Assembly: GCF_006345805.1 (NCBI RefSeq)
Contig: NC_043014.1
Coordinates: 44,020,001 to 44,084,000, forward strand
DNA from: Octopus sinensis
Taxonomy: Eukaryota
Direction: 5' to 3'
DNA length: 64,000 nucleotides
Part shown: positions 11,207 to 63,442 of the stretch, in pieces
Numbering within the stretch: the first letter of the stretch is position 1
How the letters are laid out: every line of letters begins with the position of its first letter
The notes under the pieces: generated by a model
What the model saw: only the letters and a program-made list of their open reading frames with translations
Databases searched by the model: none
What the model was told of the DNA's origin: nothing
Made by a program: the position numbers and the translations under genes

Positions 11207-11769
11207 ACCGATTAAATCTAATGGGTTCCTCTTGAAATGGTTTTGCCAGACTTTGAAGAATGGCTCATTCCATGGTGTGTAATAGCTCTCCATGAGTCAC
11301 TTTTCTATCTGAATTTGGGTATTAGAGAATTATTTCAATGTTCGATGTATGGAGGATTGAAGTCCTTAGCTATGCGCGCGTACACACCCACACATGCGTA
11401 TATATTCTGTGACTGTACAAACACTTTTATAAATAAATATTTGCATGCTTAAATCTCTGTAAATATTACCTGGATAATCATAATGATGGTTGCATGTTAG
11501 TTGTGTGAGTGTGTCAAATACAGTTGATTTAGAAGGACCTGTATAAGCTGTTTGTGTCAGGCTCTCTACACCATATTCTTCTGTGCCTCCACCATACTCA
11601 GTGTGTGTATGTGTGTGTGTGTGTACATGTTTGTGTGTGCGTTTCATCTTGTCTGCATATCTGCACACGTTTTCCACTCACAAATTCCTGAAACACATTA
11701 TTATCTACCTCTATTTCAATAACTGGTTGTTGGCTGTCAATTAGGGCTTTTTTTTATTGACAAAGATAG

Positions 11770-22715: not shown

Positions 22716-24990
22716 CACATTAGTACATAAAACTAATATGGTATTGAATCATGCCACATAATTCACTAGCTACTTTTATTTAATAATATTCTCCATTTGA
22801 GTCTTCCTTTCTCTGTTTACTGCAGGTTTGTTCTTTCCTATGAATTTATTCATTCTTTCTATGTAAAATTTAATTATAAATGGATGTATACCATCTTAAC
22901 TATACTATTTTAATATGTTAATGCTGGAATTTATTTCACTAACGGTACGCATCTTTTTAAATTACCTGAGATATTGTATCTGACAATCTCCATTGAGTGA
23001 AAGCAGAATAAATCTGTAATACATATTGAACCAATGTTTCACACACACACACACACACACTAGGGAGAGTGAGAGAGTTCCACTATTGTTTAATGAATGG
23101 ATCTATACACCTTGTGCTCATAAAGATTTTCAACTAATGTCTTACCTGTGTCCAGTGTGTGTTTATATATATAGATAATATATATAGGTTAAAGACAAGT
23201 GTTCTCTATATAGAATACACTCCGAAGTCCTTAAGATATTTGAACTTGAGTAAGTAGAGAAGTAAATATAAGGACAAGTTAGGCAAGTTGATTTACACAG
23301 AATATTGGATACATTTAATACAAAAAATGTACGTGTGTATGAATATAAAGTAATCCAACTTGAACAGAATATAAATGATATCAGGAGTTGAATGGGTTGA
23401 GTTTTATGAGACCGACAGCTGTTTCTGAGTTACTTGGGTCCATCATCAGATAACACTGCCTCCATTTGTCCATCCTTAAACTCCATCCTGTCAACAGCTT
23501 AAATGTGTAAAGCTCTCTCCTGAAGACGGAAGCAGTGTTATCTGATAACAGAATAAAGTAACTGTCACTATTCCAGACCAGCAAGCTCCCAGAAACAGCT
23601 GTTAGACTTGTAAAACTCAACCCATTCAACTCCTGATATTTATATTCTGTGTAAGTTGCACTATTTTATATTCATACTCACATGCATTTTTTTGTATTAA
23701 GGTATCTAATATTCTGTGTAAATCGACTTGCCTAACTTGCTTGTCATTACATTTACCCCTATATATATATATTGTGTGTGTGGTTATAATTTTTCAGCAT
23801 AAATATTCAGGTCACGTCTGGTTAGTATGTCCATACATATATATGACTTATTTTCAATGGGGCATTAATAATGGTCAAAGTTATTTGGGTTTCATAATTC
23901 CAAGAGAATTCTTTCCCAACACCCTCCTTTCTGTTAACATTTCAACATTTTTTTCTTAAAGAACTATTTATAAACAATTTCTTTTAAAAATATTTAATCA
24001 CATTTAATCCATTTTTTTTTTCTTCTCTATATCTCTCTATCTCTATTTTTAAACCTTAATCTGTTTGGTAAAAATCTTTCTAGTTTTTGTACTCTGCTTA
24101 CTACTGTGGTGTGCGTGTGTGTTGCAGGAGTCGATGATCAACATATATTCTGACTGTGGGGAAGCAAAAGGCAAGGGCATGTTCCAAAGAGTCAAAACTA
24201 TCGTAAATCAAGGAATAGACACCAATCGGATGTTTATGTTCGATAATGCATCTGAACTTCTCGTTAGCCAAATGCGCATTTTGCAGGTGGGTCAACTTAC
24301 ATTTCATTACCTGTTTCTCTTCTCTCATTCAGCCAAAATGTCATTGCCAATTTGTCTTCCGTCTCATGTCTTGTTGATGGTGCGCCTGACTACACACACG
24401 CACGCACGCATGCATGCATGTTTTCACTTACTATCACACAAACACACTCTTACTCTCTCTCTCACACACATACACATAAATGTTTTGCTATGATTTTTCT
24501 AGTGCATCAGTATCCCCTACCCATGCTCACACTTTAATATTTAGTACTAATCATTTTGCAATGTAGTAGCTAATTCTGATTATTCGTTATTGTCCACATT
24601 AGAAATTCATTGCTTTCATTAATTATAATCATTCGGAATATTTTTTTCTTTGTTTTTGTAATAATTTTATTTGTTTTTTTTTTTCCTATATCCTTCAGAC
24701 TTAAAACCTTATTTACCTCTAACAATCTTTTTTTGAGTGAAAGCTAAGATTCTTTGTTATGGCATAAAATATATAAATATTTTAATAAATATTTGCTGTG
24801 CATGATATATATATGTGAGTGTGTATGTGTGTGTGTGTATGGTTGTGTGTGCACATGCACAAATGCATCCCCCACACATAAGTGAGGAGAGACCCACCAC
24901 TGTTTAATGGACCAAAATACTTTGTTCTGGTAAAAATGTTTGTGATGTGTGTAAAAATTGCTGCTATTCTTTTAGTATGAATCTAGATTA

Positions 24991-30429: not shown

Positions 30430-33400
30430 TACATACACACACACACATGCACACACATACATACATACATACACACATACATACACACACATACATACAC
30501 ACACACACATATATACATACATACACACATACATATACACACACACACACATACATACATAAATATGCACACACACACATTTACGCATGTACAGACACAC
30601 ACCTGCACACAGACGTCTTCCTAATTATTTATTAACATTTTCTATTTGCTGAATACCTGTTAAGTGCCTGATTATATAAGAAGAAATTCTTCTGTCGCAG
30701 TGTGTTGCGATAAACTCTGGCAGGCATGGGGGGGGCGGAGGGGCGGCATGGGGCAGGATGTAGAATGTTGACCAACCTGTAGGCATGTGGCCGTATCTTG
30801 TATTACATCATCTCTCAAGTGTAATACATATCGATACATAGAAAACAGCTGCCCAATACATATTGGTTGGTCAATAAGGTGGCGAGTTTTTCAGAATCGT
30901 TAGCAGGAGGCGCAGAGTGGCTGTGTGGTAAGTAGCTTGTTTACCAACCACATGGTTCCGGGTTCAGTCCCACTGCATGGCACCTTGGGCAAGTGTCTTC
31001 TACTATAGCCTCGTATATGAAAGAAGCCCGTCGTATATATATATATATTTATATGTGTGCGTGTATGTATGTGTGTCTGTGTTAGTCCCCCTAGCATTGC
31101 TTGACAATCAATGCTGGTGTGTTACGTCCCCGTCACTTAGCGGTTCGGCAAAAGAGACCGATAGAATAAGTACTGGGCTTACAAAGAATAAGTCCCGGAG
31201 TCAAGTTGCTCGATTAAAGGCAGTGCTCCAGCATGGCCGCAGTCAAATGATTGAAACAAGTAAAAAAAAAGAAATGCCAGGCGATATGCTTTGCAGCATT
31301 TTATTCATCTTTACATTCTGATTTCAAATACCAAGAAAATATGTACCAGTCGAGCACTGTAAAGTTACCGTCTCGAGTCATGCTGACCCATGAGGGCTGG
31401 TTTCATGGTGTATAAATTCCTCACCTGGACAGGATGCTGGTCTGTCATAGGCTTACTCATTTTTGCCAGCTGAGTGGACTGGAGCAATATCAAACGAAGT
31501 GTTTTGCTCAAGAACACAATGTGTTGTCCAATCCGGGAATCAAAGCCACATTCTTACAATCACGAGTCCAATACCCTGACCACTAAGCCATGTGCCTCCA
31601 CTGGGGTTAATGTAATCTACTTACCACCCCCATTCTCTGTAAGTCTTGGCCTTGTGCCAAACTTTGAAACCAATGCCTGTTGAACTATTATTATTCTTTT
31701 CTACTTAAGGTACAAGGCCCGAAACTTTTGAAGGTGGGGGCCCAGTCGATTAGATCAACCTCTGTCGAAGCATCCAACCCATGCCAGCATGGAAATCAGG
31801 TGTTAAATGATGATGAAGACTATGAGGCTTGTTTTGGCCGGAGTCTATAGTAGAAGATACCTGCTCTAGGGAGCAATCAGTGTAATCAAATCTACCAGGG
31901 GTCTGTCAATTGTCTGACAAACTTTCATAACTACTCAGTCATTAAGCTACCTATTTCTTTACTACCCACAAGGGGCTAAACACAGAGGGGACAGACAAAC
32001 GGATTAAGTTGATTACATCGACCCCAGTGCGAAACTGGTACTTTATTTATCGACCCCCGAAAGGATGAAAGGCAAAGTCGACCTCGGCGGAATTTGAACT
32101 CAGAACGTATCGGCAGACGAAATACCTATTTCTTTATTACCCACTAGGGGCTAAACACAGAGGGGACAAACAAGGACAGACATAGGTATTAAGTCAATTA
32201 CATCGACCCCAGTGCGTAACTGGTACTTAATTAATCGACCCCAAAAGGATGAAAGGCAAAGTCGACCTCAGCAGAATTTGAACTCAGAACGTATCGGCAG
32301 ACGAAATACCTATTTCTTTATTACCCACAAGGGGCTAAACACAGAGGGGACAAACAAGGACAGACATAGGTATTAAGTCAATTACATCGACCCCAGTGCG
32401 TAACTGGTACTTAATTAATCGACCCCAAAAGGATGAAAGGCAAAGTCGACCTCAGCAGAATTTGAACTCAGAACGTATCGGCAGACGAAATACCTATTTC
32501 TTTATTACCCACAAGGGGCTAAACACAGAGGGGACAAACCAGGACAGACATAGGTATTAAGTCGATTACATCAACCCCAGTGCGTAACTGGTACTTAATT
32601 AATCGACCCCGATAGGATGAAAGGCAAAGTCGACCTCGGCGGAATTTGAACTCAGAACGTATTGGCAGACGAAATACCTCCAAGCATTTCGCCCGGCGTG
32701 CTAACGATTCTGCCAGCTCGCTCACCACCATTGCCTAAAATACTAACATTTCATCAGAATCCTCAACAGCCACCGTTGCTAAAATGGCAAGTATTATTAG
32801 AATGTCTGATAATAGAAATCTTCTTTGGGGGATTTATGGTTCCATTTTAAAAAGCTGCTAAAGAAGGAATTAGCTTCATTAGAATGTATGGAAAACTGAT
32901 TTTCTGTGGCTATCCGTGGAACACCTTGAATTATTTGCTAATTCACATCTGAATGGTTTTAGCGAGTGTCGGTGGTTTTAGATGGTTTCACATCAACTCA
33001 ATTAGGATGAATGAATCTAAATAAATTGCATGTTATTGTGTGTGTGTGTGTGTGTGTATGTGTGTAGCTTGCATCTTGGGTGTCTCTACATTTCCTCCAG
33101 AACTTCATCTCATTCACTCTCCTTTTCCTCTCCCTGCCCCCGCCCCCCATCTCTCGTTTTATGTGTCCATGTCTGTGTGTCTGTGTGCTCCTCTCACTGT
33201 CAGGTCTGCATTTTTTTTTTGTCTATGTGTTTGTATCTGTTTGTGTGTGATATTTCTCTATTCATATTAGTATATCCCTATGTTATTACATATGTATATA
33301 TATATATTTAATTTATTAACTTTATTTATTCCTCTTATTTTCTTCTTCACATCTCACTGTTTTCCATTTGCAGGTGTGTGAATGTGTATATATATATATA

Positions 33401-35411: not shown

Positions 35412-38400
35412 CACACATATATATATACATTTATATATGGACATATACATACATGTATGTGTTTATGTATATATATATATATACATATATATGTATGTAT
35501 ATATATATATATATATACATACACACACACACACACACATACATACATACATACACACATGCATACATATACATACATATCAGTTACAGTTCAACTCCGT
35601 ATTTCTTCCATTTCTGACTCAGTTAAGCCTTCTTCAAAACACTATATATAAGCTCTCGGTGTTGTTGTTTCTAGTATTGTTCTCTCTCAAATATAAAGTC
35701 CATTGTTACACTCGAAAGTAGGTTACACATTAATTCGGCGGGGGGGGGGGGAATCATTGGATAAATCTACAGCTATTTCAGATATAGCAGATATGGATCA
35801 ATATAAATACATATTTATTCTATATCTTCCTTGCTGGTTCTTCAGCAATATAGGGCTGGTGGTTTTATCTCGCTACCAAAGCCATTTTTTTTTCTTCATT
35901 TATTTCATGTATTTTTCAATAAATTAAACGTAGAGAGATAAAATTGATCTATCCAAGTCAGTTGCATATTAAAGTTGGTTCCATATTTTTCATTACATAA
36001 TCAGTCAAAAAATTCCTCGCTCAATGCTTGCGTTGCACCGTACTCTTCGTTTATTGCACATGCACATGTACCAGACCATACCGTACTAATTTCACCATTC
36101 TCGATATATATCCTTTTTATTTGTTTCTGTCATCTGACTGCAACCATTCGGGGTACCGCCTTGAAGAATGTTTAGTCAAATTAACCGACACCCCGGGACT
36201 TATGTTTTTAAGCCTGGTACTTATTCTGTCGGTCTATTGGCCCAACTGCTAAGTTATGGGGGCACAAACACACCAAAACCAATTGTCAAGCAGTGGTGGA
36301 GGGACAAACACAGACAGAAAGACACACATATATTTATATTTACATATAGGCGCAGGAGTGGCTGTGTGGTAAGTAGCTTGCTAACCAACCACATGGTTCC
36401 GGGTTCAGTCCCACTGTGTGACACCTTGGGCAAGTGTCTTCTACTATAGCCTCCGGCTGACCAAAGCCTTGTTAGTGGATTCGGTAGACAGAAACTGAAA
36501 GAAGCCTGTCGTATATATATATATTGTGTGTCTGTGTTTGTCCCCTCAACATCGCTTGACAACCGATGGTGGTGCGTTTACGTCCCCGTAACTTAGCGGT
36601 TCAGCAAAAGAGACCGATAGAATAAGTACTAGGCTTACAAAGAATAAGTCCTGGTGTTGATTTGCTCGACTATGGGCAGTGATCCGGCATGGCCACAGTC
36701 AAATGACAGGTTGAATGTCCACTCAGCCATTCCAAATAGTCTGCAACCAACAGCAATACCAAATTGACCTCATATCACACAGGGGTATTGTAGACAGATT
36801 TGTGAACAGTAAACAGTACTCGTTAAGTGTCGGTGCCCAAAGAAGAGAATGGAAACTGTTCGATTATAAAACGGCTTGAAGTAGACAAAGCCTGGGGAAA
36901 GTCTATGCTGGCTGCACATCATAATAACTACTTCTTGAATGCCTGCTTATCAACTGTTGGGGTGTTGAGGTTTAATTTAAATAAAAAGAAATAACAAAAG
37001 CAACAAAATCTTCTTTACAGCAAGGCTAGGTATCTTTACACATAAATGTATATACTTAGATCAGGTTTCAGCCAATATTGGTCCAGCTGTCTAATTTAAT
37101 AGCATCATCAAATAATTACATAAGGAAATTTATCTATCTATCTATCTATCTCTCTATATATATATATAAAGCTGAAGTTGTCTGTGTATGGCAGGTTTGG
37201 TAACCTTCAACTAACACTATCTCCTCCAAGACACTGCGGCACAAGTTGACCAAAATTGAGAGTATGATAGAAGAAGACTTGCTCTTCCTTCCCTAGAAGA
37301 AAAAATTCAAATCAGACCATGTTAACACCAAAAATTATTTACCACAAAAAAGTGCTTTTTTTTCTATGAAAATCCCTATTTTTTTACGATTTTTTGACTG
37401 CTGTGTCGCCCTTTTTCTGTGTATTTCAACCAGAAAAATTGTTCACTTAAAGAGAATAACAAGCTACATAATGCAAATTTTTTTTCTTTTCCAAAATTCC
37501 AATTCTAAAGGGTCGAAACAAACCCGAGCAATGCCGGGCGATACTGCTAGTAAGGAAATAAAACTATATTTCAGAAATTTCAATGCTTCCATTACTTACT
37601 ACCACCACCACCACCATCGTCATCATCATCGTCATCATCGTCATGTAACATTGCTTTATCTTTGTGACAAAACCAATTTAACTTAGTCGTTTTCTCTACT
37701 TATTGCAGAATGTTGTTGTAGAGCATGTCCGTATGGTCATTGACCTCCTGTGTAAAGATATTAAAAGTGCATACGAACCTCTCTGGGAAATGCCGTGTCA
37801 CACAAGAATACTGAAAGATGCTTTAATGGAAAGTAAGTTACAAATGTAATCGCTTTTAATTCCTCCTCCACTTCTAACCATCTCTAACCTCATCTCTCTT
37901 TTTCTCTCCATCTGTCTGTATGTCTGTGTGTATACAAGCACATACCATACACATATATATGTGCACATATATATATACACAGACATATATATGTGTGCAA
38001 GTGTATGTGTATATATAAATATATACATACATATATATAAATACACACATACATACATATTTATATATACATATAAAATATACACACTCACATACATATT
38101 TATATATACATATAAAATATACACACTCACATACATATTTATATATACATATAAAATATACACATTCACATACATATTTATATATACATATAAAATATAC
38201 ACACTCACATATAAATACATACACACACATATATATTTGTGTACTCTTTACTCTCTTTTACTCTTTTGCTTGTCTCAGTCATTTGACTGTGGCCATGCTG
38301 GAGCACTGCCTCTTAGTCGAGCAAATCGACCCCAGGACTTAGTACTTATTCTATCAGTCTCTTTTGCTCAACCACTAAGTTATGGGGATGCAAACACACC

Positions 38401-38655
38401 AGCATCAGTTGTCAAGCAATGTTGGAGGAACAAACACAGTACACACACACACATATATACATATATACATATATACTATATATATATATATATATTAGAT
38501 ACATATATACGACGGGCTTCTTTCAGTTTCCGTCTACTAAATCCACTCACAAAGCTTTGGTCGGCCTGAGGCTATAGTAGAAGACGCTTGCCCAAGATGC
38601 CACGCAGTGGGACTGAACCCGGAACCATGTGGTTGGTAAGCAAGCCACTCCTGCA

Positions 38656-38695
<40 letters not shown>

Positions 38696-40635
38696 AACAT
38701 ACATACATATAAATATACACACACACATATATGTATATATTTGTGTGTGTATATATATCTTACATAATGCAAATATTATGTAGAAAGCTGCACAACCGTG
38801 GTTTACGTCTGAAGGAAGCAATTCATGTGGACGTATTGTACGAAAATGCACAGAAGACCATCAGCAGCAAATAAAAACCATCCCACAGCAGTGATGAAAT
38901 TCCTGCATCCAGATTTCTGTGGCACCACCACTGCGGGACAATTTGCAGCTGCTACTGGCCTTCTGTGCCTTTTAGTAGTAGTTTACATCTGTACGAGATG
39001 CCTCCTCAAGATAATTACTGCAGATCTGTGACTTCCAACACTAATAATGAATATTAAGTAGCTTGCTTACCAACCACATGGTTCCGGGTTCAGTCCCACT
39101 GCGTGGAATCTTGGGCAAGTGTCTTCTGCTATAGCCTCGGGCCGACCAAAGCCTTGTGAGTGGATTTGGTAGACGGAAACTGAAAGAAGCCTGTCGGATA
39201 TATGTATTTATATATGTATGTTTGTGTGTGTGTCTGTGTTTGTCCCCCCTAGCATTGCTTGACAACTAACTGATGCTGGTGTGTTTACGTCCCCGTCACT
39301 TAGCGGTTCGGCAAAAAGAGACCGATAGAATAAGTACTGGGCTTACAAAGAATAAGTCCCGGGGCCAAGTTGCTCGATTAAAGGCAGTGCTCCAGCATGG
39401 CCGCAGTCAAATGACTGAAACAAGTAAAAGAGAAAAGAGAAATACAAAATTTAGAGGAATGATCACTAAAGTGGACATCCTTTATGCTAAACATAGATGT
39501 CAAATTGCCAATACTACGAAGAATGGCAATTTGACGTCTATGTTTAGCAGGAAGGTTGTCCACTTTAGTGGTCAGTCCTCTAAATTTTGTATGTAACACA
39601 ATTTTTAATCTTTGGATTTTTTAAATATGCTAAGTCATTGGTTTTAATTGATTAATATCAATTCCTACCCTTATTATTTAATTTTAAATCATCAGCATCG
39701 TTTAACATCCGCTTTCCATGCTGGCATGGGATGGACGGTTCAACTGGGGTCTGGGAAGCCGGATGCCCTTCCTAACACCAACCACTCCGAGAGTGTAGTG
39801 GGTGCTTTTTACGTGTCAGGCAGTACTGGCAACGGCCTTGCTTGAATCTTTTATGCATGCCACCGGCACAGGTGCCAATAAGGCAATGTTGGTAACGATC
39901 ACGCTCAAATGGTGCCCTTTTACGTACCACCGGCACGTAGCCAGTTGGCTGCTCTGGCAACGATCACGCTCAAATGGTGCTCTTGGTACCCTACTAGCAC
40001 GGGTACAAGTGCCGGTAAGGCAACGCTGGTAACGATCACACTCGAATGATGCCCTTTTACGTGCCACCGGCACGGAAGCCAGTTGGCTGCTCTGGCAACG
40101 ATCACGCTCAGATGGTGCTCTTGGCAACGTACTAGCATGGGCACAAATGCCAGTAAGGCGACGCTGGTAACGATCACACTCGAATGGTGCCTTTTATGTG
40201 CCACTGGCACAGAAGCCTGTTAGCCGCTCTGGCAACGATCATGCTCGTATGGTGCTCTTTGCACCCCTCTAGTACGGATGCTAGTCATCGAATGTGATTT
40301 TGATTTTGATTTCACTTGCCTTCGTCTTTTATTTCATTGACTTGTGTCGGTTGATAAAACTAATTCTTCACCTTTTTTCTTTCTTTTTTTCTTTTTGTTT
40401 TTGTTTTAAAGGTATCGGAGATGCTTGTGTTCAAGTCCGAGAACTTTTCAAAGAAGCAGATTTACAAGTGCCAGAGTTTAAGATTCCCCCCAAACTCTCT
40501 GATCTGCCGCCACCGATCGTTCCTGAAATTCCCAAACTCGAATCCATGCAATCAACCAATCTGCCTTCATGTTTGAAATTCTCTCCAAACAGCAAAGAGT
40601 TCCAACAACAGTTAGTAGAAACGCTTTCCAACCAA

Positions 40636-40699
<64 letters not shown>

Positions 40700-41476
40700 A
40701 GCAACAACACCATCAACAACAACAGCAGCATCATCATCATCAACAACAGCAACAGGTATTACAGACATCGCAAGCCATGAATGTGGGGAACATTCCTGGC
40801 ATACGACAACTGGGTATTCCGCAGCTTGCCATGAACTCCCTGCCGCAGGTCCAGCAAGGGGCTGCGACCCTTCCACCGCCTTCACACGCTTCCCAGCAGT
40901 TCCCGCATCACCTTCAGCAGCAGCAACAGCAGCAAGTGGTTGCGCATCAACTGCCGCCTCATCAACAGCTCCAACAGCAATCACAAATGCAACACATGCA
41001 GCTGCACCCCAATGCGCCGCCCGGGATATCGTGGCCCGCCGTCGTCATCAAGAAGGAGCCCGGTTTGTCCGAGCCAGTTCGAACAAATGTCGGTAACAGC
41101 CTAGACCCCAGTTTTTCAATGTCACAGCAAGAACAGTCAAATAACCAGGTACCGTGGCTATCAGACAACAGCCAGCATCAAAGCCTATTCACTTTACAAC
41201 AACAAATGCGACCTCCAGCGCACGAACGGCCTCATTCGAATCCACAGTTTGCAGCCCCAGTCCCTCCATTTCCAGGTTAGTATTGTTCTGTTCCTTGTTT
41301 ATCCATGGAGACATCCACCTTTCTAATTAACATTACATTCATTATGTTTCCAGGCCCAAACATGTCTGTATAGTTAAGAAATTTGCATCTCAGTCACATA
41401 GTTTTGCCTTCCACCTTAGGTAAGTGGATTTGGTAGGCAAAAACTCAAAGTGCATATGTGTGTATGTGTATGTATG

Positions 41477-41510
<34 letters not shown>

Positions 41511-41524
41511 TATAAATAAATATG

Positions 41525-41580
<56 letters not shown>

Positions 41581-42412
41581 TATTTGATTTAGATGTATTT
41601 CTCCATTTTCTTATCTTGTATTAGTAATTTGTGGTAAATCATTTTACCTTTGCCCATATAATACAGTAAATGAATTGATTGCATCGCAATCATTAACATT
41701 TATGTATTAACTTTGTTGGGTACTTCACTAGCAGTATATTGGATATATGTTATCCCATGGAGGGTTGCATTTACAACCCCTATCTCAATTTGTATATATA
41801 CATATATATATATAAATAAATATATATATATATATATATACATATAAATAAATAAATATATACATATATAAGTAAATGCGAATTCACTGTTTACTAAGTG
41901 CAGACACGATAGCGTGGTTAAGAAGCTCACCTCCCAGCCACATGGTTTCAGGTTCAGTCCCACTGTGTGACACCTTAGCCGAGTGTCTTCTAGTATATGT
42001 ACCAGAGCTAGCCAAAGCTCTGTGAGTGAATTTGGTTGATGGGAGTTGAAAGAAGCTCGTTGTGTGTAAATGTAATGTGTGTGTGTTTGCGTTACAAGTA
42101 TATTTTTGTTTGTCACTTCTGTCAGCAAAACTGTATGTTTGCTTTGGAGACATGTAAAGTAAGAACTACCTTACTTGAGAAACAAATAAGGGAAAACAGG
42201 AAGCGCATGCATCTGTGAAACGGTGCCTCGATAATATATTCATCTAACCCATGCTACTATGGAAAAACAGATGTAAAACAAATGATACCACATGAAACAT
42301 AACACTATAAACTAATTGACTCTGTGCCTGTGTTTAAATGCTTGATATTATTTTTTTTACACATGTTTGTTAATTCATGTATAAATCCTGTTTACATGTT
42401 TGCATATATGTG

Positions 42413-42443
<31 letters not shown>

Positions 42444-45400
42444 ATATATATGTATATATATGTGTATATATATGTATATATATGTGTATATATATATATG
42501 TGTATATATGTTTGTATATATGTAGTTGCTGATATTGTGTTTTTTTAAGTGATTTGTATTAAAATATTTCTCTTAATTTTTCAGGTGCTGTTCAAATAAA
42601 AAGGGAGCCCACAGATTTCTCATGTTCTACAAATCAAGGTAACCCTGGCCCCCTCGGCAGCCTCGCTGCGTTAACGGCACAAGTGAGCTCCAGCCAGACG
42701 TCTTCTATGAACACCCCTACATATCTTCCAACCTCTCAGGCCATCCCAACATATCCATCAGCCACCGTGGTCGCTCCCCCACCCATCAAGCTGGAGCGCA
42801 TGTCACCAGGTAACGGCCCTTTTAGCTGCATGCAGCCAGGAGGTCCACCCCAGCCAGGCCCACCGTCCCAAGCTCAGTTGCAGTCAGTGGCTCTCCATGG
42901 CAACCGTAGTGACTGCCGTTATCCTGGAACCAACACGATGGGCAGCTTGAACATGTATGCACAAATAACGGGTGCACAGCAGCACGCAGCCAATAGAGGA
43001 GAGTTCTTCAGAGAGATCGACAACCTCCAAGCTGCTCAGGCGCAGGCCGCACAAGCGCAGGCCGCACAAGCGCAGGCTGCGCACCAAAGGACGTCGCCGT
43101 TTCGCAAAAGCGGGAGCAACCCGCTGAAGAACCTGGCCCTCATGACCAAATCATCCCCGCCGTTGTTCGTAGCGCCGCAGCCACACCCCGCCGCCGTACA
43201 GATCAAACAGGAGCCCGTCGATTCGTTAATCGGCAGCCCGGCTGTCGTCACGGCCGCGGCGGTACAGCGAAACCAAGGGGCCCACGTGATGAACCCCGAA
43301 CTGTTTGCGCCCCAGGCCACAGGCTTGCCTCGAGGATCGATACCGAGTGGGGCTTTCCCCCCCACCGGCAGCGTCAGTCCTGTCACATTGCAACAGCAGC
43401 TGACGCACTCTCAGCTGTCACCGCACCAACAGCAGCAACAGATTCAGCTGCAGTTACAGCAGCAGCACCTCCAACAGCAACACCACATTCAGCAGCAACT
43501 GCAACACCAACAGCTGCAGCACCAACAGTTACAGCAGCAGCATCAACAGTTACAGCAGCAACTAGAGAGCCGGCGGATACGAAGACCATCGAGTGCTGAG
43601 AGGAGACAATATTGTAAGCACATTTATCTCCCTTTAACTCTGTTTAAAATAATAATGAAATTATTGTATACAGTGCTCAGGTGCACCACAACTTGTCAAA
43701 AGTGCATATAAAGCATATGCAGTAATGTACAAATGTCTGGGAAGTGAACAGTGTATGAGTCAGATACATGCTTGCGAGTGTATGGAGGGGAGAAAATCAG
43801 GTGTAGTGTTGGCGAATCTCGGGAAGCATGGAAGTTTTGAAGGATGCAGTGCTCCGACAACTAACAACTGATGCTGGCAGTTTGTTCCATTCTTCAGCAA
43901 CTCTTAGCATGAAAAAATGTTTCCGAAAGTCATGGGAGCTGTGTTGTTTTCTGAAACATGTCCACGGGTGTTAGACGAGTGGAGTTTGAAAAGGTGCTCA
44001 GAGTTATTGTTTGTAAGATGGTTAATAATTTTATGGGTGTCTGCCAAGTCAGCTGCCAGACGTAGGAGTTTCAACGTATCCATGCTCAGGGAAGGAAGGC
44101 ATTCAGAATATGTCAAATGCCTGATGGAGGGGATATTCTCTTAGTAAATGATAACTTTTACAATAAATAAATCCCAATAACTTTTGAGTAATATGTCGGC
44201 TTTTTACATTAAAGACAAATGGCCTCACTTTTATGGGGAACTAAGTAGGATGTTGTGACGTTCATACCTTTCCTATTAATGTCAGACAAAATATTTATGG
44301 AATTTGTAACATCCCTTTACAATTTAGGTTCAAAATCTCATCACCAGTGTTCCTCAACCCTTATACCCCTGCGTAACACTTAAAATAAATCCCATATCTC
44401 AAGGAACCTCGGCACAAAAAAAATTATATACTCCTAGGCTTACGAACCACATGGTTCTGGGTTCAGTCCCACTGCGTGGCACCTTGGGCAAGTATCTTCA
44501 ACAACCAGTTTTGTTGTGTGATGGAATCTGAGTACTTACAGAGGGGAAATATTTTGAAATTTGCTTAGACCATTCCTGCACAGATTGCAATGTGTCTGCT
44601 TAAAGGCGCAGGAGTGGCTATGTGGTAAGTAGCTTGCTTACCAACCACATGGTTCTGGGTTCAGTCCCTCTGCATGGCACCTTGATCAAGTCTCTTCTAC
44701 TATAGCCTCGGGCCGACCAAAGCCTTGTGAGTGGATTTGGCAGATGGAAACTGAAAGAAGCCCGTCGTATATATGTATATGTATAAGTATATATATGTGT
44801 GTGTTTGTCTCCCCAACATCGCTTGACAACTGATGCTGATGTGTTTTCGTCCCCGTAACTCAGTATTTTGGCAAAAGAGACCGATAGAATAAGTACTAGG
44901 CTTACAAAGAATAAGTCATGGGGTAGATTTGCTTGAGTAAAAGCAGTGCTCCTGCATGGCCACAGTCAAATTACTGAAACAAGTAAATGAGTCGAAGGGA
45001 TTTCTTTCTCATATTTTTTTCATCATAGTTTGTATGGTAAATATATATACATAAATATATAGGGTATCCAGAAATTACAGACATCACTAAATATATCCTC
45101 AATGGCTGTTATATTTTTTTTGATAGCATAATAGGTTAGATAGGATGATATCTATATTACCATATCACAATAACCGATAATGTATTGTGCATGCATAGTA
45201 ATATTATGATCATGAAATTAGCATTAGCTTATCTCACTCTTTCTCACAGAACCCTAAGGTTCTGGTGAACCCCGGTTGAGAAACATGACGAGTCATCACA
45301 GTCAAATTAGCCTTTGATCCTCACTCATCATCATCATCATGTTGGCATGGGTCGGATGGTTTGAATGAGCTGGCGTTAGGTTCCAGTCCTCCGTTTTGGC

Positions 45401-48400
45401 ATGGTTTCTATAGCTGGGTACACTGTGCGGCACAAGTGCTCTTTCACGTGGCACTGGCTTGGGTGCTTCTTTACCTGGCTGTGGCACAGGTGCTTTTTTC
45501 ACGTGACAACAATATGGGTGCTTTCTATGTGGTACCATCACATAAGGATCAAAAAAAAGAAGTACAAGTGAAGTACTGGCATCAATTGATATTCCTATAA
45601 TACATCTTGGATATCAATGAAAGTAAATAGAAGGAAGCTTAAGATGTGAATCAGTTAAAATCAAATATGAAGACAGAGAGGAACACAGTCTTTTCTTGCT
45701 AATGACTCATGTCTTCTCTGCAATTTTTATATTGGAGGGAGATGGTATAGTTTAATCAATCAATCCTCCATATATAACTGGTACTTGCTTTATCAACTTC
45801 CAGATTGCTGTAAAATAATAATAATAATAATAATAATAATAATTGTGTACAGTGCTCAGGTGCACTACAACTCATCTAAAGTGTATATATAATCAGGTGT
45901 AGTTTCGGCGGATTTCGGAAAGCATGGGATCCTGATGGAATGCAAATGTAGAACAGTAGAACAAAGGGGCAGAAGTCTGACTGCTACTACAAGTCATCAC
46001 AAGGGAGCTTCTATGTGGTTGCTGGACCTACTAGAAATAGCAGTCAAGTGTCTCTCTAAATCTAGTTTCCTCTTCCCTGCCTTTATTTTTCTTTTATGAC
46101 ATCCTTTTTTTTTTATGTGACATATTTAACTTGATGCAGGCCACATTCCTGTTGAGATTATCTTTATATATACACACACACATTGTATGAAGAGATGTAA
46201 AAAGAAGTTTGGGCAAATTTGTTCTATGATACAAAGTTACTTCCCTTGTTTACTGTTTCCTAATGCTGCCAGTTTGCCATTTGCATATAATTACAATGTA
46301 GTTCAGTGGGATAGTTATGACTGGAATGCCTTTGAGCATATGTCTGCTCATTTAGAGCTGACTTGGGTCTAAACAACAACACATATTACAAGACATTTGG
46401 TATGGATTCCACCACGTCTCTTTGATCTGTTTAATATACTAAAGAGTGACGTTCCATTGATTACAGTTAGGTCTAACAGTATTAAAATCAAAGATTTTGT
46501 TGATGTCCTTCTTTTAATTCTATATTATTTTCTTTATATTTATTGTCTGAATATGAAAATAGTACAGCTGAAAGGTGTTGATCATCTCCACTAAATTGGA
46601 TTAAAAGTTTTTAAGGGAAAACAAGGCTTATATATTTGAAGGGAGTGGTGAAAGGGTTAAATAGTTCTGTTAAAAGTTAGATTAAATAATTCAAATTCTT
46701 TAAATGAAATTATTGCTTTTAATGTTTTAAAGATTCTTCTTGAGTTTTGTAATGTTTTGAGGTGAATCTTTGAAGGAAATTAAAATTTCAACCCTTTGAT
46801 GTAATATTATAGGATATTTATCTATCTATCTATCTATCATCATTCATCTTGGGCTTCTTTTCTTTCTTTCTTTCTTTGCACAGAATGTTCCTGGCACAGG
46901 TAATTTTCTCTTTTCATATTTTTCTTTTAAAGATATTATTAATTTCATTATTATTATTATTGAGTGAGAGAGCAGTGCATGCCATCAAAGTGACACTGGG
47001 GTAAAATATACAAAGCCCAGTAAACCCATCATGACTGCTTGTCTCATAAGGGTACACTAGGCACATGCATCACAACCATATGTGCGTGACATGGTGATCT
47101 CATATCGAGAAAAACAGCACATGACCTTGCAGGTGGGGCTCAGTTAGAAATTTCTTAAGGTCGAGTAACCCATCTGGCTCAAAAGGTCTTGAGTAACCCA
47201 TCTAGCTCAAAAGGGCTCAGTTAGAAATTTCTTAAGGTCGAGTAACCCATCTGGCTCAAAAGGATGTTGAATGAAACATCCATGGTACCAGAGGTGAATT
47301 ATTCAAACCCCAAGGAATCCCTCTCAATACATGGCTATGATGCTCCCCTACTACTTCTGCTCATGATCAGAGAGGCACATATCGTCAGCCACTCAGGGAC
47401 ATGCTCAACTGGTTATGGTCAAACAATTAGCTAGCAAATATGTGGTATTGAGCAGAATATTTGCTGTAGCCCATCTTTTATACCAAGACAAAACAACATA
47501 CATGATAACACTTCCAATCAGTTAAGATGAGAAGCCATGAGAGCCACTGCCTTATACTGCATCAGGGAATTCATTATTATTATTATTATTAAGGCAATGG
47601 GTAATAGAAGTAGTAGAGTAATAACCAAAATATTGTGTTATTTACTTACGTTCTTTTTAGTTCTGAGTTCAAATTCCTGCCAGCATTCACTTTGTTTTTC
47701 ATTCTACTGTGCTAACCTACCACTTCATATTCACCTTACCTTAATAGTATTAATCTAAATCACTTGAGATACTCGTTCTGCCTTGGTTTTGCATTTTCCT
47801 CTAATATAATATATATATATATAGGCACAGGAGTGGCTGTGTGGTAAGTAGCTTGTTTACCAACCACATGGTTCCGGGTTCAGTCCCACTGCGTGGCACC
47901 TTGGGCAAGTGTCTTCTACTATAACCTCGGGCCGACCAAAGCCTTGTGAGTGGATTTGGTAGACGGAAACTGAAAGAAGCCTGTCGTATATTTATAGATA
48001 TATATATATATATATGTGTGTGTTTGTGTTTGTCCCTCTAGCATTGCTTGACAACCGATGCTGGTGTGTTTATGTCCCCGTTACTTAGCAGTTCGGCAAA
48101 AGAGACCGATAGAATAAGTACTGGGCTTACAAAAGAATAAGTCCCGGGGTCGAGTTGCTCGATTAAAGGCGGTGCTCCAGCATGACCGCAGTCAAATGAC
48201 TGAAACAAGAGTATATATATATATATAATAAAATATTAGGGAATAAATCCAAACTTACAGGGAAAAATCAGATTTAGGATTGAATCCAATTTTATAGTAA
48301 AATATATATATATATATTATATTAAATTAGAGATAAAACCACTATTAGGCAAATCATACAATGAAAAACTTAAGCCAATACATAAGATTAATTAATTTAT

Positions 48401-60346: not shown

Positions 60347-61314
60347 ATCATCATCATCATCGTTTAACGTCCGTTCTCCATTCTCCATGCTAGCATGGGT
60401 TGGATGGTTCAACCGGGGATCTGGGAAGCCAGAAGGCTGCACCAGGCTCCAGTCTTATCTGGCAATGTTTCTACAGCTGGATGCCCTTCCTAACGCCAAC
60501 CACTCCATGAGTGTAGTGGGTGCTTTTTACGTGCCACCTGCACAGGTGCCAGGCGAGGCTGGCACGGATTGGTGCATTTTACGTGCAACCAGCACGGAAC
60601 CCAGTCGAGGCGGCACTGGCATCGGCCACGGTTCGGATGGTGCTTTTTACGTGCCACCGGCACGGAAACCATTCGAGGCGGCACTGGCATCGGCCACGAT
60701 TCGGATAGTGCTTTTTATGTACCACCAGTCCAGGGGTCCTAGCATCTGCCAGGTGCCAGTCATAGGATTGGTTCAATTTCGATTTCGATTTCACTTGCCC
60801 CAACAGGTCTTCGCAAGCAAGGGTGCCTGTCGTCGGATGAGGTTCGATATCGACTTCGCTTGCCTCAACAGGTCTTTGTGTGTCCAAGGGAGGAAAGGCA
60901 TGCATAAGTGGGCTGGACTCACTTGTCCTGCCTGGTCTTCTCACGCACAGCATATTTCCAAAGGTCTCGGTCGCTGGTCATTTCCTCAGTGAGGCCTAAA
61001 GTTCGAAGGTCGTGCTTCACCACCTCGTCCCAGGTTTTCCTGGGTCTACCTCTTCCACGGGTTCCCTCAACTGCTAGGGATTGGCACTTTTTCACACACC
61101 TATCTTCATCCATTCTCGTCACATGACCATACCAGCGCAATCGTCTCTCTTGCACACCACAACTGATGCTTCTTAGGTCCAACATTTCTCTCAAGGTACC
61201 AACGCTCATTCGAGTATGCACACTGACATTACACATCCATCGGAGCATACTGGCTTCATTCCTCACGAGCTTACGCATGTCCTCAGCAGTCACGGCCCAT
61301 GTTTCACTGCCATA
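60347..61314 (-). mobile_element. 5'-truncated RTE-clade LINE (C-terminal ORF fragment, 3'UTR, (GAT)n tail)
   Basis: 60919-61314 translates YGSETW...EASMLRWMC...[11 protein letters not shown]...RGRPRKTW...DRDLWK, typical of the RTE C-terminus; the 3'UTR has gtgccaccggcac repeats and ends in a (GAT)n tail. Confidence 0.9.
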
Positions 61315-61453
61315 TATATATGGATGGATGGATGGATGGATGGATGGATGGATGGATGGGTGGGTGGGTGGGTGGGTGGGTGGGTGGGTGGGTGGGTGGG
61401 TGGGTGGATGGATGGATGGAGGATGGATGGATGGATGGATGGATGGATGGATG

Positions 61454-61485
<32 letters not shown>

Positions 61486-62509
61486 TAAATGACGGGCTTC
61501 TTTCAGTTTCTGTCTACCAAATCCACTCACAAGGTTTTGGTCAGCCTTATGCTGTAGAAGACACTTGCCCAAGGTGCCACAAAGTGGGACTGAACTTGGA
61601 ACCATGTGGTTGGTAAGCAAGCTTCTTACCACACAACCACATCTGGGAAGAAAAACAGAAGACCAAGTCTTTCTTTACCTTAGGAACTTGTACTGTAAAA
61701 CACTTTCTTTTTTTCTATCTGCATTTAGTGAATGTTAAAAGATTTTTTTCCAATGGAGAAGTGAACAACCATGAAATGAAGTTATGCCAGACTAAAACTC
61801 TGAATTGATGAATCCCAGCATCACTTTGCTGGTTTTGGTTCCCTATTGGTGAATAGTTAGGGTATTTTTTTTTATGTGAAAATCATTAATATTCACTTCC
61901 ATTATTTAGCTATCCACCACCCAGAGCTAAAACGTTTTTCATCTGATCTCTTCAGATTCAGAAAGGTTAAACAACAATTTCTTCTGAAATTAAGAGAAAT
62001 TATTCATTTTTTTTCTCTCATAGCAGACAGAGAGTTAATAAGAGATTGTATTGAATCTCTTTCAATGACCTGAGGTTAAGTAAAGTAATTTAATTTCTAT
62101 AAATGGTTGGAGGTTAAATAACAGAAAATGAGGTTACTCACAGCTTAAACACGCCAAGTATTCGAGTCATTATCAACAGCAAGTTGCCATCCACCAATCT
62201 TGGAGAATCTAAGGGGGAAAAAATGGCTAATATTCAAATGGAATTTATGAAAAAAAAACAAATCTATTAGATTTTCATCTCACAGCTAGAGGTAAAAATA
62301 ACAAAATATTCAGTCAAAAAAACAATGTTGGTGAAAATAATATCTCTTGTATTCTGCCCACTGCCTTTTAAAGTTTTAGAATAGAATCCTTCAGGCCAAG
62401 AATATTGGTCTCTGATGTTGAAATAGATGTGGCCCTCAACTTGAAGCTCCATTCAAGCATGAATCGAAAAGCAGAAGTTTAACATCTGAAAATGCAACAA
62501 AAAATGAGA

Positions 62510-63442
62510 GCTTGAAAAGCAAACTCCACCCATCTAACACCCGTGGACATATCCTTTTCAAACTCCACCCATCTAACACCCGTGGACATATCCTTTTCAA
62601 ACTCCACCCATCTAACACCCGTGGACATATCCTTTTCAAACTCCACCCATCTAACACCCGTGGACATATCCTTTTCAAACTCCACCCATCTAACACCGTG
62701 GACATATCCTTTTCAAACTCCACCCATCTAACACCCGTGGACATATCCTTTTCAAACTCCACCCATCTAACACCCGTGGACATATCCATTTCAAACTCCA
62801 CCCATCTAACACCCGTGGACATATCCTTTTCAAACTCCATCCATCGAACACCCGTGGACATATCCTTTTCAAACTCCACCCATCTAACACCCGTGGACAT
62901 ATCCTTTTCAAACTCCACCCATCGAACACCCGTGGACATATCCTTTTCAAACTCCACCCATCGAACACCCGTGGACATATCCTTTTCAAACTCCACCCAT
63001 CGAACACCCGTGGACATATCCTTTTCAAACTCCACCCATCTAACACCTGTGGACATATCCTTTTCAAACTCCACCCATCGAACACCCGTGGACATATCCT
63101 TTTCAAACTCCACCCATCTAACACCCGTGGACATATCCTTTTCAAACTCCACCCATCTAACACCCGTGGACATATTTACAAAGTCAGAAAACAGCACAGC
63201 TCCCTTGACTTCAGGAAACATTTTTTCACGCTGAGAGTTGCTGAAGCATGGAACAAACTGCCGGCATCAGTCGTTAGTTGTCGGAGCACTGCATCCTTCA
63301 AAACTTCCATGCTTCCTGAGATTCGCCAACACTACACCTGATTTTCTCCCCTCCATACACACACAAGCATGTATCAGACAATTGTACATTACTGCATATA
63401 CTCTATACGCACTTTCTGACAAGTTGTGGTGCACCTGAGCAC
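62510..63442 (+). mobile_element. CR1-type LINE 3' fragment with internal 39-bp tandem array (~17 copies, 62520-63175)
   Basis: Unit catatccttttcaaactccacccatctaacacccgtgga (HILFKLHPSNTRG); continues into [32 protein letters not shown]; its tail resumes at 63988 after SINE/RTE insertions. Confidence 0.85.

What the first reader, a model, noticed from the sequence alone, without database searches (positions are those of the whole stretch)
40412..43613. NUGGC-like GTPase fused to a ~600-aa polyQ tail with four psi-K-x-E motifs
After the NUGGC-like helices the protein continues through two large exons with Q25 and further Q/H tracts, an (AQAAQ)n repeat, many S/T-P sites, and IKKE(P) 41047-41058, IKRE(P) 42596-42607, IKLE 42785-42796 and IKQE(P) 43202-43213. 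These are canonical SUMO-acceptor motifs typical of transcription and chromatin regulators. The vertebrate NUGGC I recall ends shortly after the helical region, so this may be a lineage-specific, condensate-forming nuclear dynamin-like GTPase.
Basis: partly seen in the sequence, partly recalled or inferred. Interest (0 to 1): 0.7.

Follow-up and report, generated by a model that had tools for sequence, protein, structure and literature searches.

The report
Q-rich SUMO-motif tail of octopus NUGGC-like GTPase
The two glutamine-rich exons are the real C-terminal tail of one very large cephalopod gene for a nuclear dynamin-like GTPase (FHA domain + NUGGC/SLIP-GC-type GTPase); the tail carries four conserved SUMO-acceptor-type motifs, an interesting but not startling variant of an uncharacterised, widely conserved animal protein family.

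Summary
Observation confirmed. Every coordinate is exact: Q25, the AQ repeat, and IKKE(P), IKRE(P), IKLE, IKQE(P). Four IKxE in the 630-aa tail compare with 0.013 expected by shuffling (0 of 20,000 shuffles reach 4). S/T-P sites (8) are not enriched.

The upstream exons do belong to a NUGGC/SLIP-GC-like GTPase. Composite scores are Dynamin_N 64 bits and DUF7605 34.5 bits, both above cut-off. The best hits are bivalve, annelid, hemichordate and non-mammalian vertebrate "SLIP-GC-like" proteins.

Exons 24128-24286, 37709-37832 and the first 22 codons of exon 40412-41275 align without a gap to those orthologues. One uninterrupted exon therefore carries both the family's last conserved helix and the polyQ/IKKEP region.

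Sepia esculenta cDNA confirms the 41275/42585 junction. It also confirms the end of the protein (…RRQY, stop completed by a 16-nt micro-exon at 46884) and conservation of all four motifs (about 75% identity; dN 0.17, dS saturated).

The gene is single-copy, spans at least 247 kb, and has an upstream FHA domain and an acidic N-terminal disordered exon.

The tail's sequence is cephalopod-specific. However, long tails with ψKxE(P) motifs recur in orthologues, so it is not a new architecture. SUMOylation and condensate formation remain inference. No transcript yet bridges 37832 to 40412.

The parts
24128..24286 (+). Coding exon (53 codons, phase 0/0) encoding the C-terminal end of the DUF7605 domain of the NUGGC/SLIP-GC-like GTPase
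   Evidence: Pfam DUF7605 positions 148-183 of 183, E 9.4e-5 alone and 34.5 bits in the composite. tblastn hits from 11 orthologues at this position. Canonical AG/GT splice sites.
37709..37832 (+). Coding exon (41 codons + 1 base) encoding the conserved helix ...[27 protein letters not shown]
   Evidence: tblastn hits from Saccostrea, Sinanodonta, Ptychodera, Saccoglossus and Capitella. It forms the middle part of the gapless phmmer alignment. Splice sites.
40412..41275 (+). Large exon B. Its first 22 codons (40414-40479, [22 protein letters not shown]) are the family's last conserved helix. Then come a ~50-aa linker, Q25 (40633-40707), Q/H tracts and the conserved island [26 protein letters not shown] (41005-41082) containing IKKE at 41047-41058.
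   Evidence: One uninterrupted ORF. The orthologue alignment runs across the 37832/40412 junction into this exon. The island is conserved in Sepia cDNA. Single copy in the genome apart from CAG/CAA-repeat matches.
42585..43613 (+). Large exon C. Features: IKRE(P) 42596-42607; [11 protein letters not shown] 42776-42808 (ψKxExxSP phospho-dependent SUMO motif); near-invariant 47-aa block [47 protein letters not shown] 42890-43030; AQ repeat 43034-43081; IKQE(P) 43202-43213; Q/L-rich predicted helix 43424-43567; C-terminal [15 protein letters not shown] 43568-43612.
   Evidence: Sequence. The B/C junction and motif conservation appear in Sepia esculenta RNA-seq contigs. AF2 gives mostly disordered, with helices at residues 117-162 and 279-329. 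Coordinates.
46884..46899 (+). 16-nt micro-exon AATGTTCCTGGCACAG. Its first two bases complete the stop codon (T|AA); the rest is 3' UTR, followed by another donor.
   Evidence: Exact 16-nt match to the Sepia cDNA immediately after ...RRQY. AG acceptor and GT donor flank it.

Best explanation
Window 40412-43613 encodes the roughly 600-aa intrinsically disordered C-terminal tail of one single-copy cephalopod gene spanning at least 247 kb. The inferred domain order is: FHA domain; a ~680-aa acidic, serine-rich disordered region with an NLS-like basic cluster; a NUGGC/SLIP-GC-type dynamin-superfamily GTPase (Dynamin_N + DUF7605 + C-terminal helices); then this Q-rich tail.

Shown: the exon structure, family membership, continuity of the tail with the last conserved helix inside one exon, the C-terminus, and strong purifying selection on the tail between octopus and cuttlefish.

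Inferred mechanism: the protein is a nuclear GTPase. Its FHA domain reads phospho-threonine marks. Its two disordered arms carry nine ψKxE SUMO-consensus lysines. The four in the tail are proline-flanked 'synergy-control'-type sites, and one (IKLERMSP) is a phospho-dependent site. SUMO conjugation at these lysines, together with the Q25 tract and the Q/L-rich C-terminal helix (a likely coiled coil), would give regulated multivalent self-association or recruitment to nuclear foci. This would resemble the speckled nuclear pattern that gave SLIP-GC its name. The conserved C-terminal RRxRRPSS motif would add a basophilic-kinase switch.
For: Family membership. The P-loop exon matches Dynamin_N. The composite of mapped exons scores Dynamin_N 64.3 bits, DUF7605 34.5 bits and FHA 56.7 bits, all above cut-off. 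G1 GDTGAGKS, G3 DLPG and G4 TKSD are intact. One hundred homologues were found, the best being SLIP-GC-like proteins at E 1e-54. The exons are collinear on one strand and no second locus exists.

Continuity with the tail. phmmer aligns residues 2-118 of the three-exon composite without a gap to Sinanodonta 902-1018 (E 7e-21), and likewise to Ptychodera, Capitella and Saccoglossus. The alignment crosses both junctions and ends about 22 aa into exon B. Exon B is one ORF running from that helix through Q25 to IKKEP.

Transcript support. Sepia esculenta RNA-seq contigs join exon B to exon C to the micro-exon and stop after RRQY.

Selection. Identity over 417 aligned aa is 75%, with dN 0.17 and dS saturated. 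All four motifs are conserved with their flanks.

Motif statistics. Four observed against 0.087 expected, with 0 of 20,000 shuffles reaching 4. The N-terminal disordered exon has 5 against 1.04 expected, P = 0.004. Orthologue tails total 9 against 2.2 expected; Ptychodera has VKREP, VKQEP and IKLE with 0 of 5,000 shuffles reaching 3.

Motif definitions. ψKxE and the PDSM with serine five residues after the lysine come from PMC3395311. The SC motif, a SUMO site flanked by Pro or Gly, comes from PMC3554661.

Disorder. 200 of 342 residues in exon C have pLDDT below 50. A Q/L helix has pLDDT above 90.
Against: No transcript or protein record was recovered that bridges 37832 to 40412, or that joins the helix to the polyQ. 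The cuttlefish contigs all break inside the polyQ. Searches with the N-terminal 72-115 aa of that region found nothing. Records of this genome and its near relatives may also be withheld from the tools.

The tail has no detectable sequence homologue outside cephalopods, so its function cannot be transferred from any studied protein.

SUMOylation, nuclear localisation, GTPase activity and self-association are all untested. The AF2 run used a single sequence. Assigning the FHA exons, which lie 66-150 kb upstream, to the same gene rests only on collinearity and on orthologue architecture.
Confidence: 0.72

Rival explanations
1. The Q-rich exons are, wholly or also, a separate transcription unit. 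An internal promoter or alternative first exon would produce a stand-alone Q-rich, SUMO-regulated co-regulator. On this view the fusion to the GTPase is an artefact of reading open frames.
For: No bridging transcript was found. The cuttlefish contigs begin inside the polyQ, and the gene caller starts the protein at an internal Met. There is an in-frame Met (LESMQS) upstream of the polyQ in exon B.
Against: Exon B starts at a strong acceptor in the correct phase. Its first 22 codons are homologous to the family's terminal helix, continuing a gapless alignment from the previous exon. No stop separates helix and polyQ. Contig breaks at a CAG/CAA repeat are the expected assembly artefact. Orthologues in other phyla also carry long tails directly after this helix.
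Confidence: 0.1
2. The tail belongs to the GTPase, but the IKxE(P) islands are not SUMO acceptors. They would instead be conserved short linear motifs for another partner or modification (acetylation, ubiquitin, a peptide-binding domain). The main function of the tail would lie in the invariant 47-aa block and the Q/L coiled coil.
For: The most conserved element is not a ψKxE site. It is [45 protein letters not shown], which is predicted to be partly helical. Conservation around the motifs extends well beyond four residues, for example [25 protein letters not shown]. A consensus match does not prove modification (PMC3395311).
Against: Four of the 14 lysines sit in the exact ψKxE context, all with Pro flanks, and one has the ψKxExxSP spacing. 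Non-homologous tails of orthologues in other phyla independently carry VKREP, VKQEP and IKQEP. This points to selection for the motif itself rather than for its flanks.
Confidence: 0.15
3. The tail is neutrally evolving low-complexity sequence produced by repeat expansion, with no function of its own.
For: The tail is 22% Q, contains a CAG/CAA run and an AQ repeat, shows no homology outside cephalopods and is mostly predicted disordered.
Against: Amino-acid identity between octopus and cuttlefish is 75% while synonymous sites are saturated (dN 0.17). Several blocks are invariant. The frame is kept open over 630 codons.
Confidence: 0.03

Closest known systems
Mammalian NUGGC / SLIP-GC (nuclear GTPase, germinal-centre associated)
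   Same: Same Pfam architecture of the core (Dynamin_N P-loop GTPase + DUF7605) and the same C-terminal helical region. The family name is attached by NCBI and UniProt to the nearest homologues.
   Different: The octopus protein is far longer. It has an N-terminal FHA domain, a ~680-aa acidic disordered region and a ~600-aa Q-rich tail. Whether mammalian NUGGC falls inside the clade of long vertebrate forms or outside it was not tested, because no mammalian sequence was in hand. A divergent clade labelled 'SLIP-GC-like' (turtle, teleosts) lies far from the octopus gene in the tree.
Long 'SLIP-GC-like' / FHA-domain GTPases of bivalves, annelids, hemichordates and non-mammalian vertebrates (e.g. 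Saccostrea 1148 aa, Dreissena 1910 aa, Capitella 1443 aa, Ptychodera 2083 aa, Protopterus 1936 aa, Alligator 2005 aa); all uncharacterised predictions
   Same: Best sequence matches, at 48-57% identity over the G domain. The octopus gene groups with the bivalve members (support 87/95). Shared features are the FHA domain, an N-terminal disordered region, the GTPase and a variable C-terminal tail; several tails carry ψKxE(P).
   Different: The tails share no alignable sequence. Tail length ranges from 69 to 855 aa. Only the cephalopod tail is glutamine-rich (22% against 2-12%), and it has four proline-flanked IKxE sites plus a Q/L helix.
Synergy-control / SUMO-consensus motifs of transcription factors (GR, AR, Nurr1, ERR, HSF1, MEF2)
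   Same: The pattern is identical: ψKxE flanked by Pro within a few residues. IKLERMSP fits the phospho-dependent ψKxExxSP form.
   Different: The host protein is a GTPase with no recognisable DNA-binding domain. Modification is not demonstrated.
Bacterial dynamin-like protein (Nostoc BDLP, PDB 2J68)
   Same: The only solved structure detected by sequence, through the G domain.
   Different: The match is very weak (E 5.6e-4, 22 bits). BDLP is membrane-associated and has no FHA domain or disordered tails.

Membership tests
NUGGC/SLIP-GC-like dynamin-superfamily GTPases | Dynamin_N-type G domain with intact G1 (GxxxxGKS), G3 (DxxG) and G4 (T/NKxD) | tested here: met
   PF00350 scores 64.3 bits against a cut-off of 27 on the exon composite. 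GDTGAGKS, VDLPG and TKSD are read directly from the translations. These exons lie upstream of the window, at C18:43975018-43982295.
NUGGC/SLIP-GC-like dynamin-superfamily GTPases | DUF7605 domain after the G domain | tested here: met
   PF24564 scores 34.5 bits against a cut-off of 27 on the composite. Only its last 36-38 positions lie in the window, in exon 24128-24286. The composite lacks some middle exons, so the domain is only partly covered.
NUGGC/SLIP-GC-like dynamin-superfamily GTPases | Conserved C-terminal helices (…[FY]EPLW[ED]…) collinear with family members | tested here: met
   Gapless phmmer alignments to Sinanodonta (E 7e-21), Ptychodera, Capitella, Saccoglossus and Saccostrea across exons 24128-24286, 37709-37832 and 40412-40479.
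NUGGC/SLIP-GC-like dynamin-superfamily GTPases | Nuclear, speckle-like localisation and GTP hydrolysis | not testable with these tools
   The only indication is an NLS-like basic cluster (RKRKAAMAAANASSSKKLK) in the N-terminal exon.
Orthologue of mammalian NUGGC proper | Falls in the same clade as mammalian NUGGC in a family tree | not tested
   No mammalian NUGGC sequence was obtained. In the tree the octopus gene groups with bivalve long forms. The vertebrate long-form clade includes amphibian records named 'nuclear GTPase SLIP-GC'.
FHA-domain proteins | FHA domain profile match | tested here: met
   PF00498 scores 56.7 bits against a cut-off of 20.7 on the two exons at C18:43820130-43820327 and 43904806-43904922. 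Their assignment to this gene is by collinearity and orthologue architecture only.
SUMO substrates with consensus / synergy-control sites | ψKxE consensus, Pro/Gly-flanked (SC motif) | tested here: met
   [30 protein letters not shown] and [10 protein letters not shown]. Definitions. Enrichment. Conservation.
SUMO substrates with consensus / synergy-control sites | Covalent SUMO attachment to the motif lysine | not testable with these tools
   Needs a biochemical assay.
Phospho-dependent SUMO motif (PDSM) | ψKxExxSP, with Ser five residues after the Lys | tested here: met
   IKLERMSP at 42785-42808, identical in Sepia. The other three motifs do not have this spacing.
PolyQ / Q-rich coiled-coil self-association domains | Long uninterrupted Q tract and an adjacent helical Q/L heptad-like region | tested here: inconclusive
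   Q25 is present. The Q/L-rich segment is predicted as a helix with pLDDT above 90. That model used a single sequence, and no oligomer prediction or experiment was done.

The most novel reading that the evidence does not exclude
Bilaterians share a so-far unstudied nuclear 'FHA-NUGGC' GTPase whose disordered arms are dedicated SUMO-acceptor platforms. In coleoid cephalopods the C-terminal arm would have been rebuilt into a polyQ / coiled-coil, four-site SUMO module. That module would turn the GTPase into a phospho- and SUMO-switched scaffold of nuclear bodies. Mammalian NUGGC would be a truncated remnant of this ancestral protein.
Probability: 0.2. Interest if true: 0.6.

Novelty: new variant of a known kind. 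Interest (0 to 1): 0.35.

Why it matters
NUGGC/SLIP-GC is a poorly understood nuclear dynamin-superfamily GTPase, known only from mammalian germinal-centre B cells. This locus shows that the invertebrate relatives are much larger, with an FHA phospho-reader and long disordered arms. It also shows that the arms are under selection for SUMO-consensus lysines. That gives a concrete, testable hypothesis for how the family is targeted within the nucleus. It also provides a clean example of a fast-evolving disordered tail that keeps its short motifs: four IKxE sites, a 47-aa invariant block and a C-terminal RRxRRPSS are conserved between octopus and cuttlefish while synonymous sites are saturated. 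For genome annotation, it documents a gene of at least 247 kb whose stop codon is split onto a 16-nt micro-exon. Automatic pipelines could easily truncate such a gene or split it at the polyQ.

Tried and rejected
1. My first guess was that the Q-rich exons belonged to a transcription factor (MITF/TFE-like, a nuclear receptor or similar) with a DNA-binding domain downstream. I rejected this: the cuttlefish cDNA stops right after RRQY, and the downstream window holds no further coding exon.

2. Pfam scans of the tail exons found no family.

3. A word-index search with the N-terminal 115 aa found nothing among proteins of 370-1176 aa.

4. A full HMMER scan of 1.84 billion representatives with exon B found only the cuttlefish tail fragment plus three polyQ chance hits.

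5. A search of the own genome with the DUF7605 profile found nothing, and its controls were also silent, so it was uninformative.

6. The genome search with protein ids failed twice. It worked with plain letters.

7. A 23-nt pattern for the 3' UTR exon failed, because only 16 nt form the micro-exon. blastn found it.

8. phmmer of the tail against 104 family members found no similarity to any non-cephalopod tail.

9. dN/dS could not be expressed as a ratio because dS is saturated.

10. Loci taken from the own genome were not readable in scripts at first, so upstream exons were read with the ORF listing and translate.

Full report
**What is in the sequence**

The window is G000:C18:44020001-44084000 of a 2.7-Gb genome. 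It is AT-rich and full of SINE-like copies and microsatellites. The nearest transcript relative comes from a cuttlefish, so this is a cephalopod, most probably an octopod.

On the + strand there are two large open exons, 40412-41275 and 42585-43613. Both have canonical AG acceptors preceded by polypyrimidine tracts and GT donors. Joined to the small exon 37709-37832, they read in one frame...[27 protein letters not shown]... Q25 ... IKKEP ... [13 protein letters not shown] ... IKLERMSP ... (AQ)n ... IKQEP ... Q/L-rich ... [15 protein letters not shown].

So do the Q25 run (40633-40707, mixed CAG/CAA) and the AQ repeat (43034-43081).

**Is it more than chance?**

The 630-aa tail is 22% Q and 11% P and holds only 14 lysines. 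Four of those lysines lie in IKxE. Composition-preserving shuffles give 0.087 [VILMF]KxE and 0.013 IKxE on average, and none of 20,000 shuffles reaches four. The 'many S/T-P sites' amount to eight, about what the composition predicts. That part of the description is overstated.

**Where the protein ends**

A homology search restricted to the non-Q part of the tail found one protein, P0001 (440 aa, 68% identity). It is encoded on about 1.5-kb Logan contigs from at least four sequencing runs. One of those runs, SRR31864754, is RNA-seq of Sepia esculenta, so these contigs are cDNA.

The contig L009 joins the equivalents of exon B and exon C directly (PPFPG|AISIKREP). It ends its reading frame at ...RRQY followed by TAA.

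In the window, exon C ends with CAA TAT T|gtaagc. The 16 bases that follow the T in the cuttlefish cDNA, AATGTTCCTGGCACAG, occur exactly once downstream, at 46884-46899. They sit between an AG acceptor and a GT donor. The stop codon is therefore split (T|AA) onto a 16-nt micro-exon, and the protein ends at RRQY.

**What the upstream exons are**

Exon 24128-24286 matches the last 36 positions of Pfam DUF7605. A Dynamin_N profile search of the whole genome found a P-loop exon 45 kb upstream of the window, at C18:43975072-43975206 on the + strand. It reads ...RTVIAVVGDTGAGKSSLLNALLD....

A search with these exons returned 100 homologues. The best are named 'nuclear GTPase SLIP-GC-like' or are unnamed, and all carry Dynamin_N + DUF7605:
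- Saccostrea, E 1e-54
- Capitella, with an FHA domain
- Sinanodonta
- Ptychodera
- Saccoglossus
- Protopterus
- Xenopus
- Dreissena, with an FHA domain
- Alligator.

Using the Saccostrea core as a probe, eight further exons map collinearly on the same strand between 43975018 and 43998716. No second locus appears in the genome. Their translations carry G3 (VDLPG) and G4 (TKSD).

The composite of mapped exons scores Dynamin_N 64.3 bits and DUF7605 34.5 bits, both above the curated cut-offs.

Upstream of the P-loop exon lies a 678-codon acidic, serine-rich exon with an NLS-like basic cluster. Two exons further upstream, at C18:43820130-43820327 and 43904806-43904922, are 62-68% identical to the Dreissena FHA region. 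Together they score 56.7 bits on Pfam FHA.

The inferred gene therefore spans at least 247 kb. Its domain order is FHA, acidic disordered region, NUGGC-type GTPase, Q-rich tail. Assigning the FHA exons to this gene rests on strand, order and orthologue architecture, not on transcripts.

**Does the tail belong to that gene?**

Direct transcript evidence is missing. The cuttlefish contigs all break inside the polyQ. Searches with the N-terminal part of exon B found nothing.

The homology evidence is nevertheless strong. I concatenated exons 24128-24286, 37709-37832 and the start of exon B. phmmer aligns residues 2-118 of that composite without a single gap to Sinanodonta 902-1018 (E 7e-21). It does the same with Ptychodera, Capitella, Saccoglossus and Saccostrea.

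The alignment crosses both exon junctions in the right phase and runs about 22 residues into exon B ([22 protein letters not shown]). So exon B begins with the family's last conserved helix. Without a stop or a splice, it continues into the linker, Q25 and the IKKEP island. The cuttlefish cDNA then ties the polyQ to IKKEP, exon C and the stop.

I put the probability that the tail is part of the GTPase protein at about 0.85-0.9. The remaining doubt is an additional internal promoter or an unusual splice.

**Is the tail functional?**

Octopus and cuttlefish tails are 75% identical over 417 aligned residues. In the non-polyQ part, dN is 0.17 while synonymous sites are saturated.

Conservation is blocky. 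The conserved blocks are:
- [25 protein letters not shown]
- PSNPQFA.P.PPFPGA..IKREP.DFS
- [13 protein letters not shown]
- [21 protein letters not shown]
- the near-invariant 47-aa block [45 protein letters not shown]
- [29 protein letters not shown]
- the C-terminal [14 protein letters not shown].

A single-sequence AlphaFold model of exon C is mostly disordered, with 200 of 342 residues below pLDDT 50. It has two helices. One covers the end of the invariant block plus the AQ repeat, with moderate confidence. The other is a 50-residue Q/L-rich helix with pLDDT above 90. A neutral low-complexity explanation is therefore excluded.

**The motifs**

All four sites are ψKxE, the canonical SUMO consensus (PMC3395311). 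All four are proline-flanked within four residues: [30 protein letters not shown] and [10 protein letters not shown]. This is the synergy-control arrangement, described as a SUMO site flanked by Pro or Gly (PMC3554661).

IKLERMSP also has the serine five residues after the lysine, followed by proline. That is the phospho-dependent PDSM form.

The N-terminal acidic exon has five more ψKxE against 1.04 expected (P = 0.004).

The C-terminal RRIRRPSS fits a basophilic-kinase (RxRxxS) pattern. That assignment is from general knowledge and was not tested here.

**Comparison with relatives**

The nearest relatives are instead long proteins of 1,100-2,100 aa.

In a maximum-likelihood tree the octopus gene groups with the bivalve members (support 87/95). 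Long forms from skate, lungfish, coelacanth, amphibians and reptiles make a well-supported vertebrate clade (99/100). A divergent group of turtle and teleost 'SLIP-GC-like' proteins lies far away. I had no mammalian NUGGC sequence, so its position is untested.

After the shared EPLW helix the orthologues have tails of 69-855 aa. None of these is alignable to the cephalopod tail, nor was any homologue found in 1.84 billion representative proteins.

Several of the tails nevertheless contain their own ψKxE(P) sites:
- Ptychodera: VKREP, VKQEP and IKLE (3 against 0.10 expected; 0 of 5,000 shuffles)
- Sinanodonta: IKQEP and VKVE
- Leucoraja: LKKE twice
- Protopterus: IKVE
- Alligator: VKRE.

Summed over nine tails, that is 9 observed against 2.2 expected.

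The architecture 'NUGGC-type GTPase + disordered tail with SUMO-consensus sites' is thus older than cephalopods. What is cephalopod-specific is the sequence itself, the glutamine richness (22% against 2-12%), the Q25 tract, the Q/L helix and the invariant 47-aa block.

**Mechanism proposed**

Shown: family membership, intact G motifs, gene structure, the C-terminus, motif enrichment and purifying selection.

Inferred: the protein is a nuclear GTPase. Its FHA domain binds phospho-threonine ligands. Its disordered arms are SUMO-modified at ψKxE lysines, one of them under proline-directed phosphorylation control. The polyQ tract and the Q/L helix add homotypic association. Together these would give regulated recruitment to, or assembly of, nuclear foci. 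This is consistent with the speckled nuclear pattern for which SLIP-GC was named (general knowledge).

None of this was or could be tested here. There is no solved structure for the family; the only PDB match is the bacterial dynamin-like protein 2J68 at E 5.6e-4. No paper in the searched library deals with the long FHA-bearing form.

**Verdict**

The assignment to a NUGGC-like GTPase is right, and the fusion is very probably real. The 'lineage-specific' claim holds for the sequence of the tail but not for the architecture. 'Condensate-forming' is a reasonable but untested hypothesis.

It is a new variant within a known, poorly studied family. It is useful for annotation and as a lead for SUMO biology of nuclear dynamin-like GTPases, but it is not a categorical novelty. 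Interest: 0.35.

Noticed in passing
window 46884-46899: A 16-nt micro-exon (AATGTTCCTGGCACAG) carries the last two bases of the stop codon and is followed by another intron. It is identical, base for base, in Sepia esculenta cDNA. Gene predictors could easily miss it; they would then read through 43613 into 32 spurious codons (…CKHIYLPL…).
   Followed up: yes
G000:C18:43970710-43972812 (locus L018:710-2812), upstream of the window: A 678-codon acidic, Ser-rich exon of the same gene. It has an NLS-like cluster (RKRKAAMAAANASSSKKLK) and five ψKxE motifs against 1.04 expected (P = 0.004).
   Followed up: partly
G000:C18:43820130-43820327 and 43904806-43904922, upstream of the window: Two exons encoding an FHA domain (Pfam 56.7 bits), 62-68% identical to the FHA of the Dreissena orthologue. 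If they belong to this gene, its introns reach 66-85 kb and the gene spans at least 247 kb.
   Followed up: partly
window 42890-43030: A 47-aa block ([47 protein letters not shown]) is almost invariant between octopus and cuttlefish, more so than the SUMO-type motifs. It matches no known family. Its end is predicted to be helical.
   Followed up: partly
window 9015-11207: A tandem array of 13 copies of a 167-bp unit (95% matches) lies inside the large intron region upstream of exon 24128. Nature unknown.
   Followed up: no
window 62520-63175; also 31989-32679, 4845-5223, 19236-19586: Further minisatellite arrays: 39 bp x 17, 184 bp x 3.8, 76 bp x 5 and 62 bp x 5.7.
   Followed up: no
window 36254-36577, 39041-39265, 44618-44965, 47801-48037 and many others, both strands: Numerous copies of a SINE-like element, whose pseudo-translation recurs as …[11 protein letters not shown]… / …[19 protein letters not shown]…. 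They fill the introns of this gene.
   Followed up: no
window 60919-61674 (- strand): A 251-codon open frame resembles the C-terminal part of a LINE reverse transcriptase (…[19 protein letters not shown]…[15 protein letters not shown]…). It is interrupted by an (IHPS)n repeat and is probably a decayed retrotransposon.
   Followed up: no
G000:C19:46686000-46687500, C14:57394000-57395100 and other loci: Large CAG/CAA-rich arrays elsewhere in the genome match the Q25-coding stretch at 80-88% identity. These are repeat similarity only, not paralogues of the tail.
   Followed up: no
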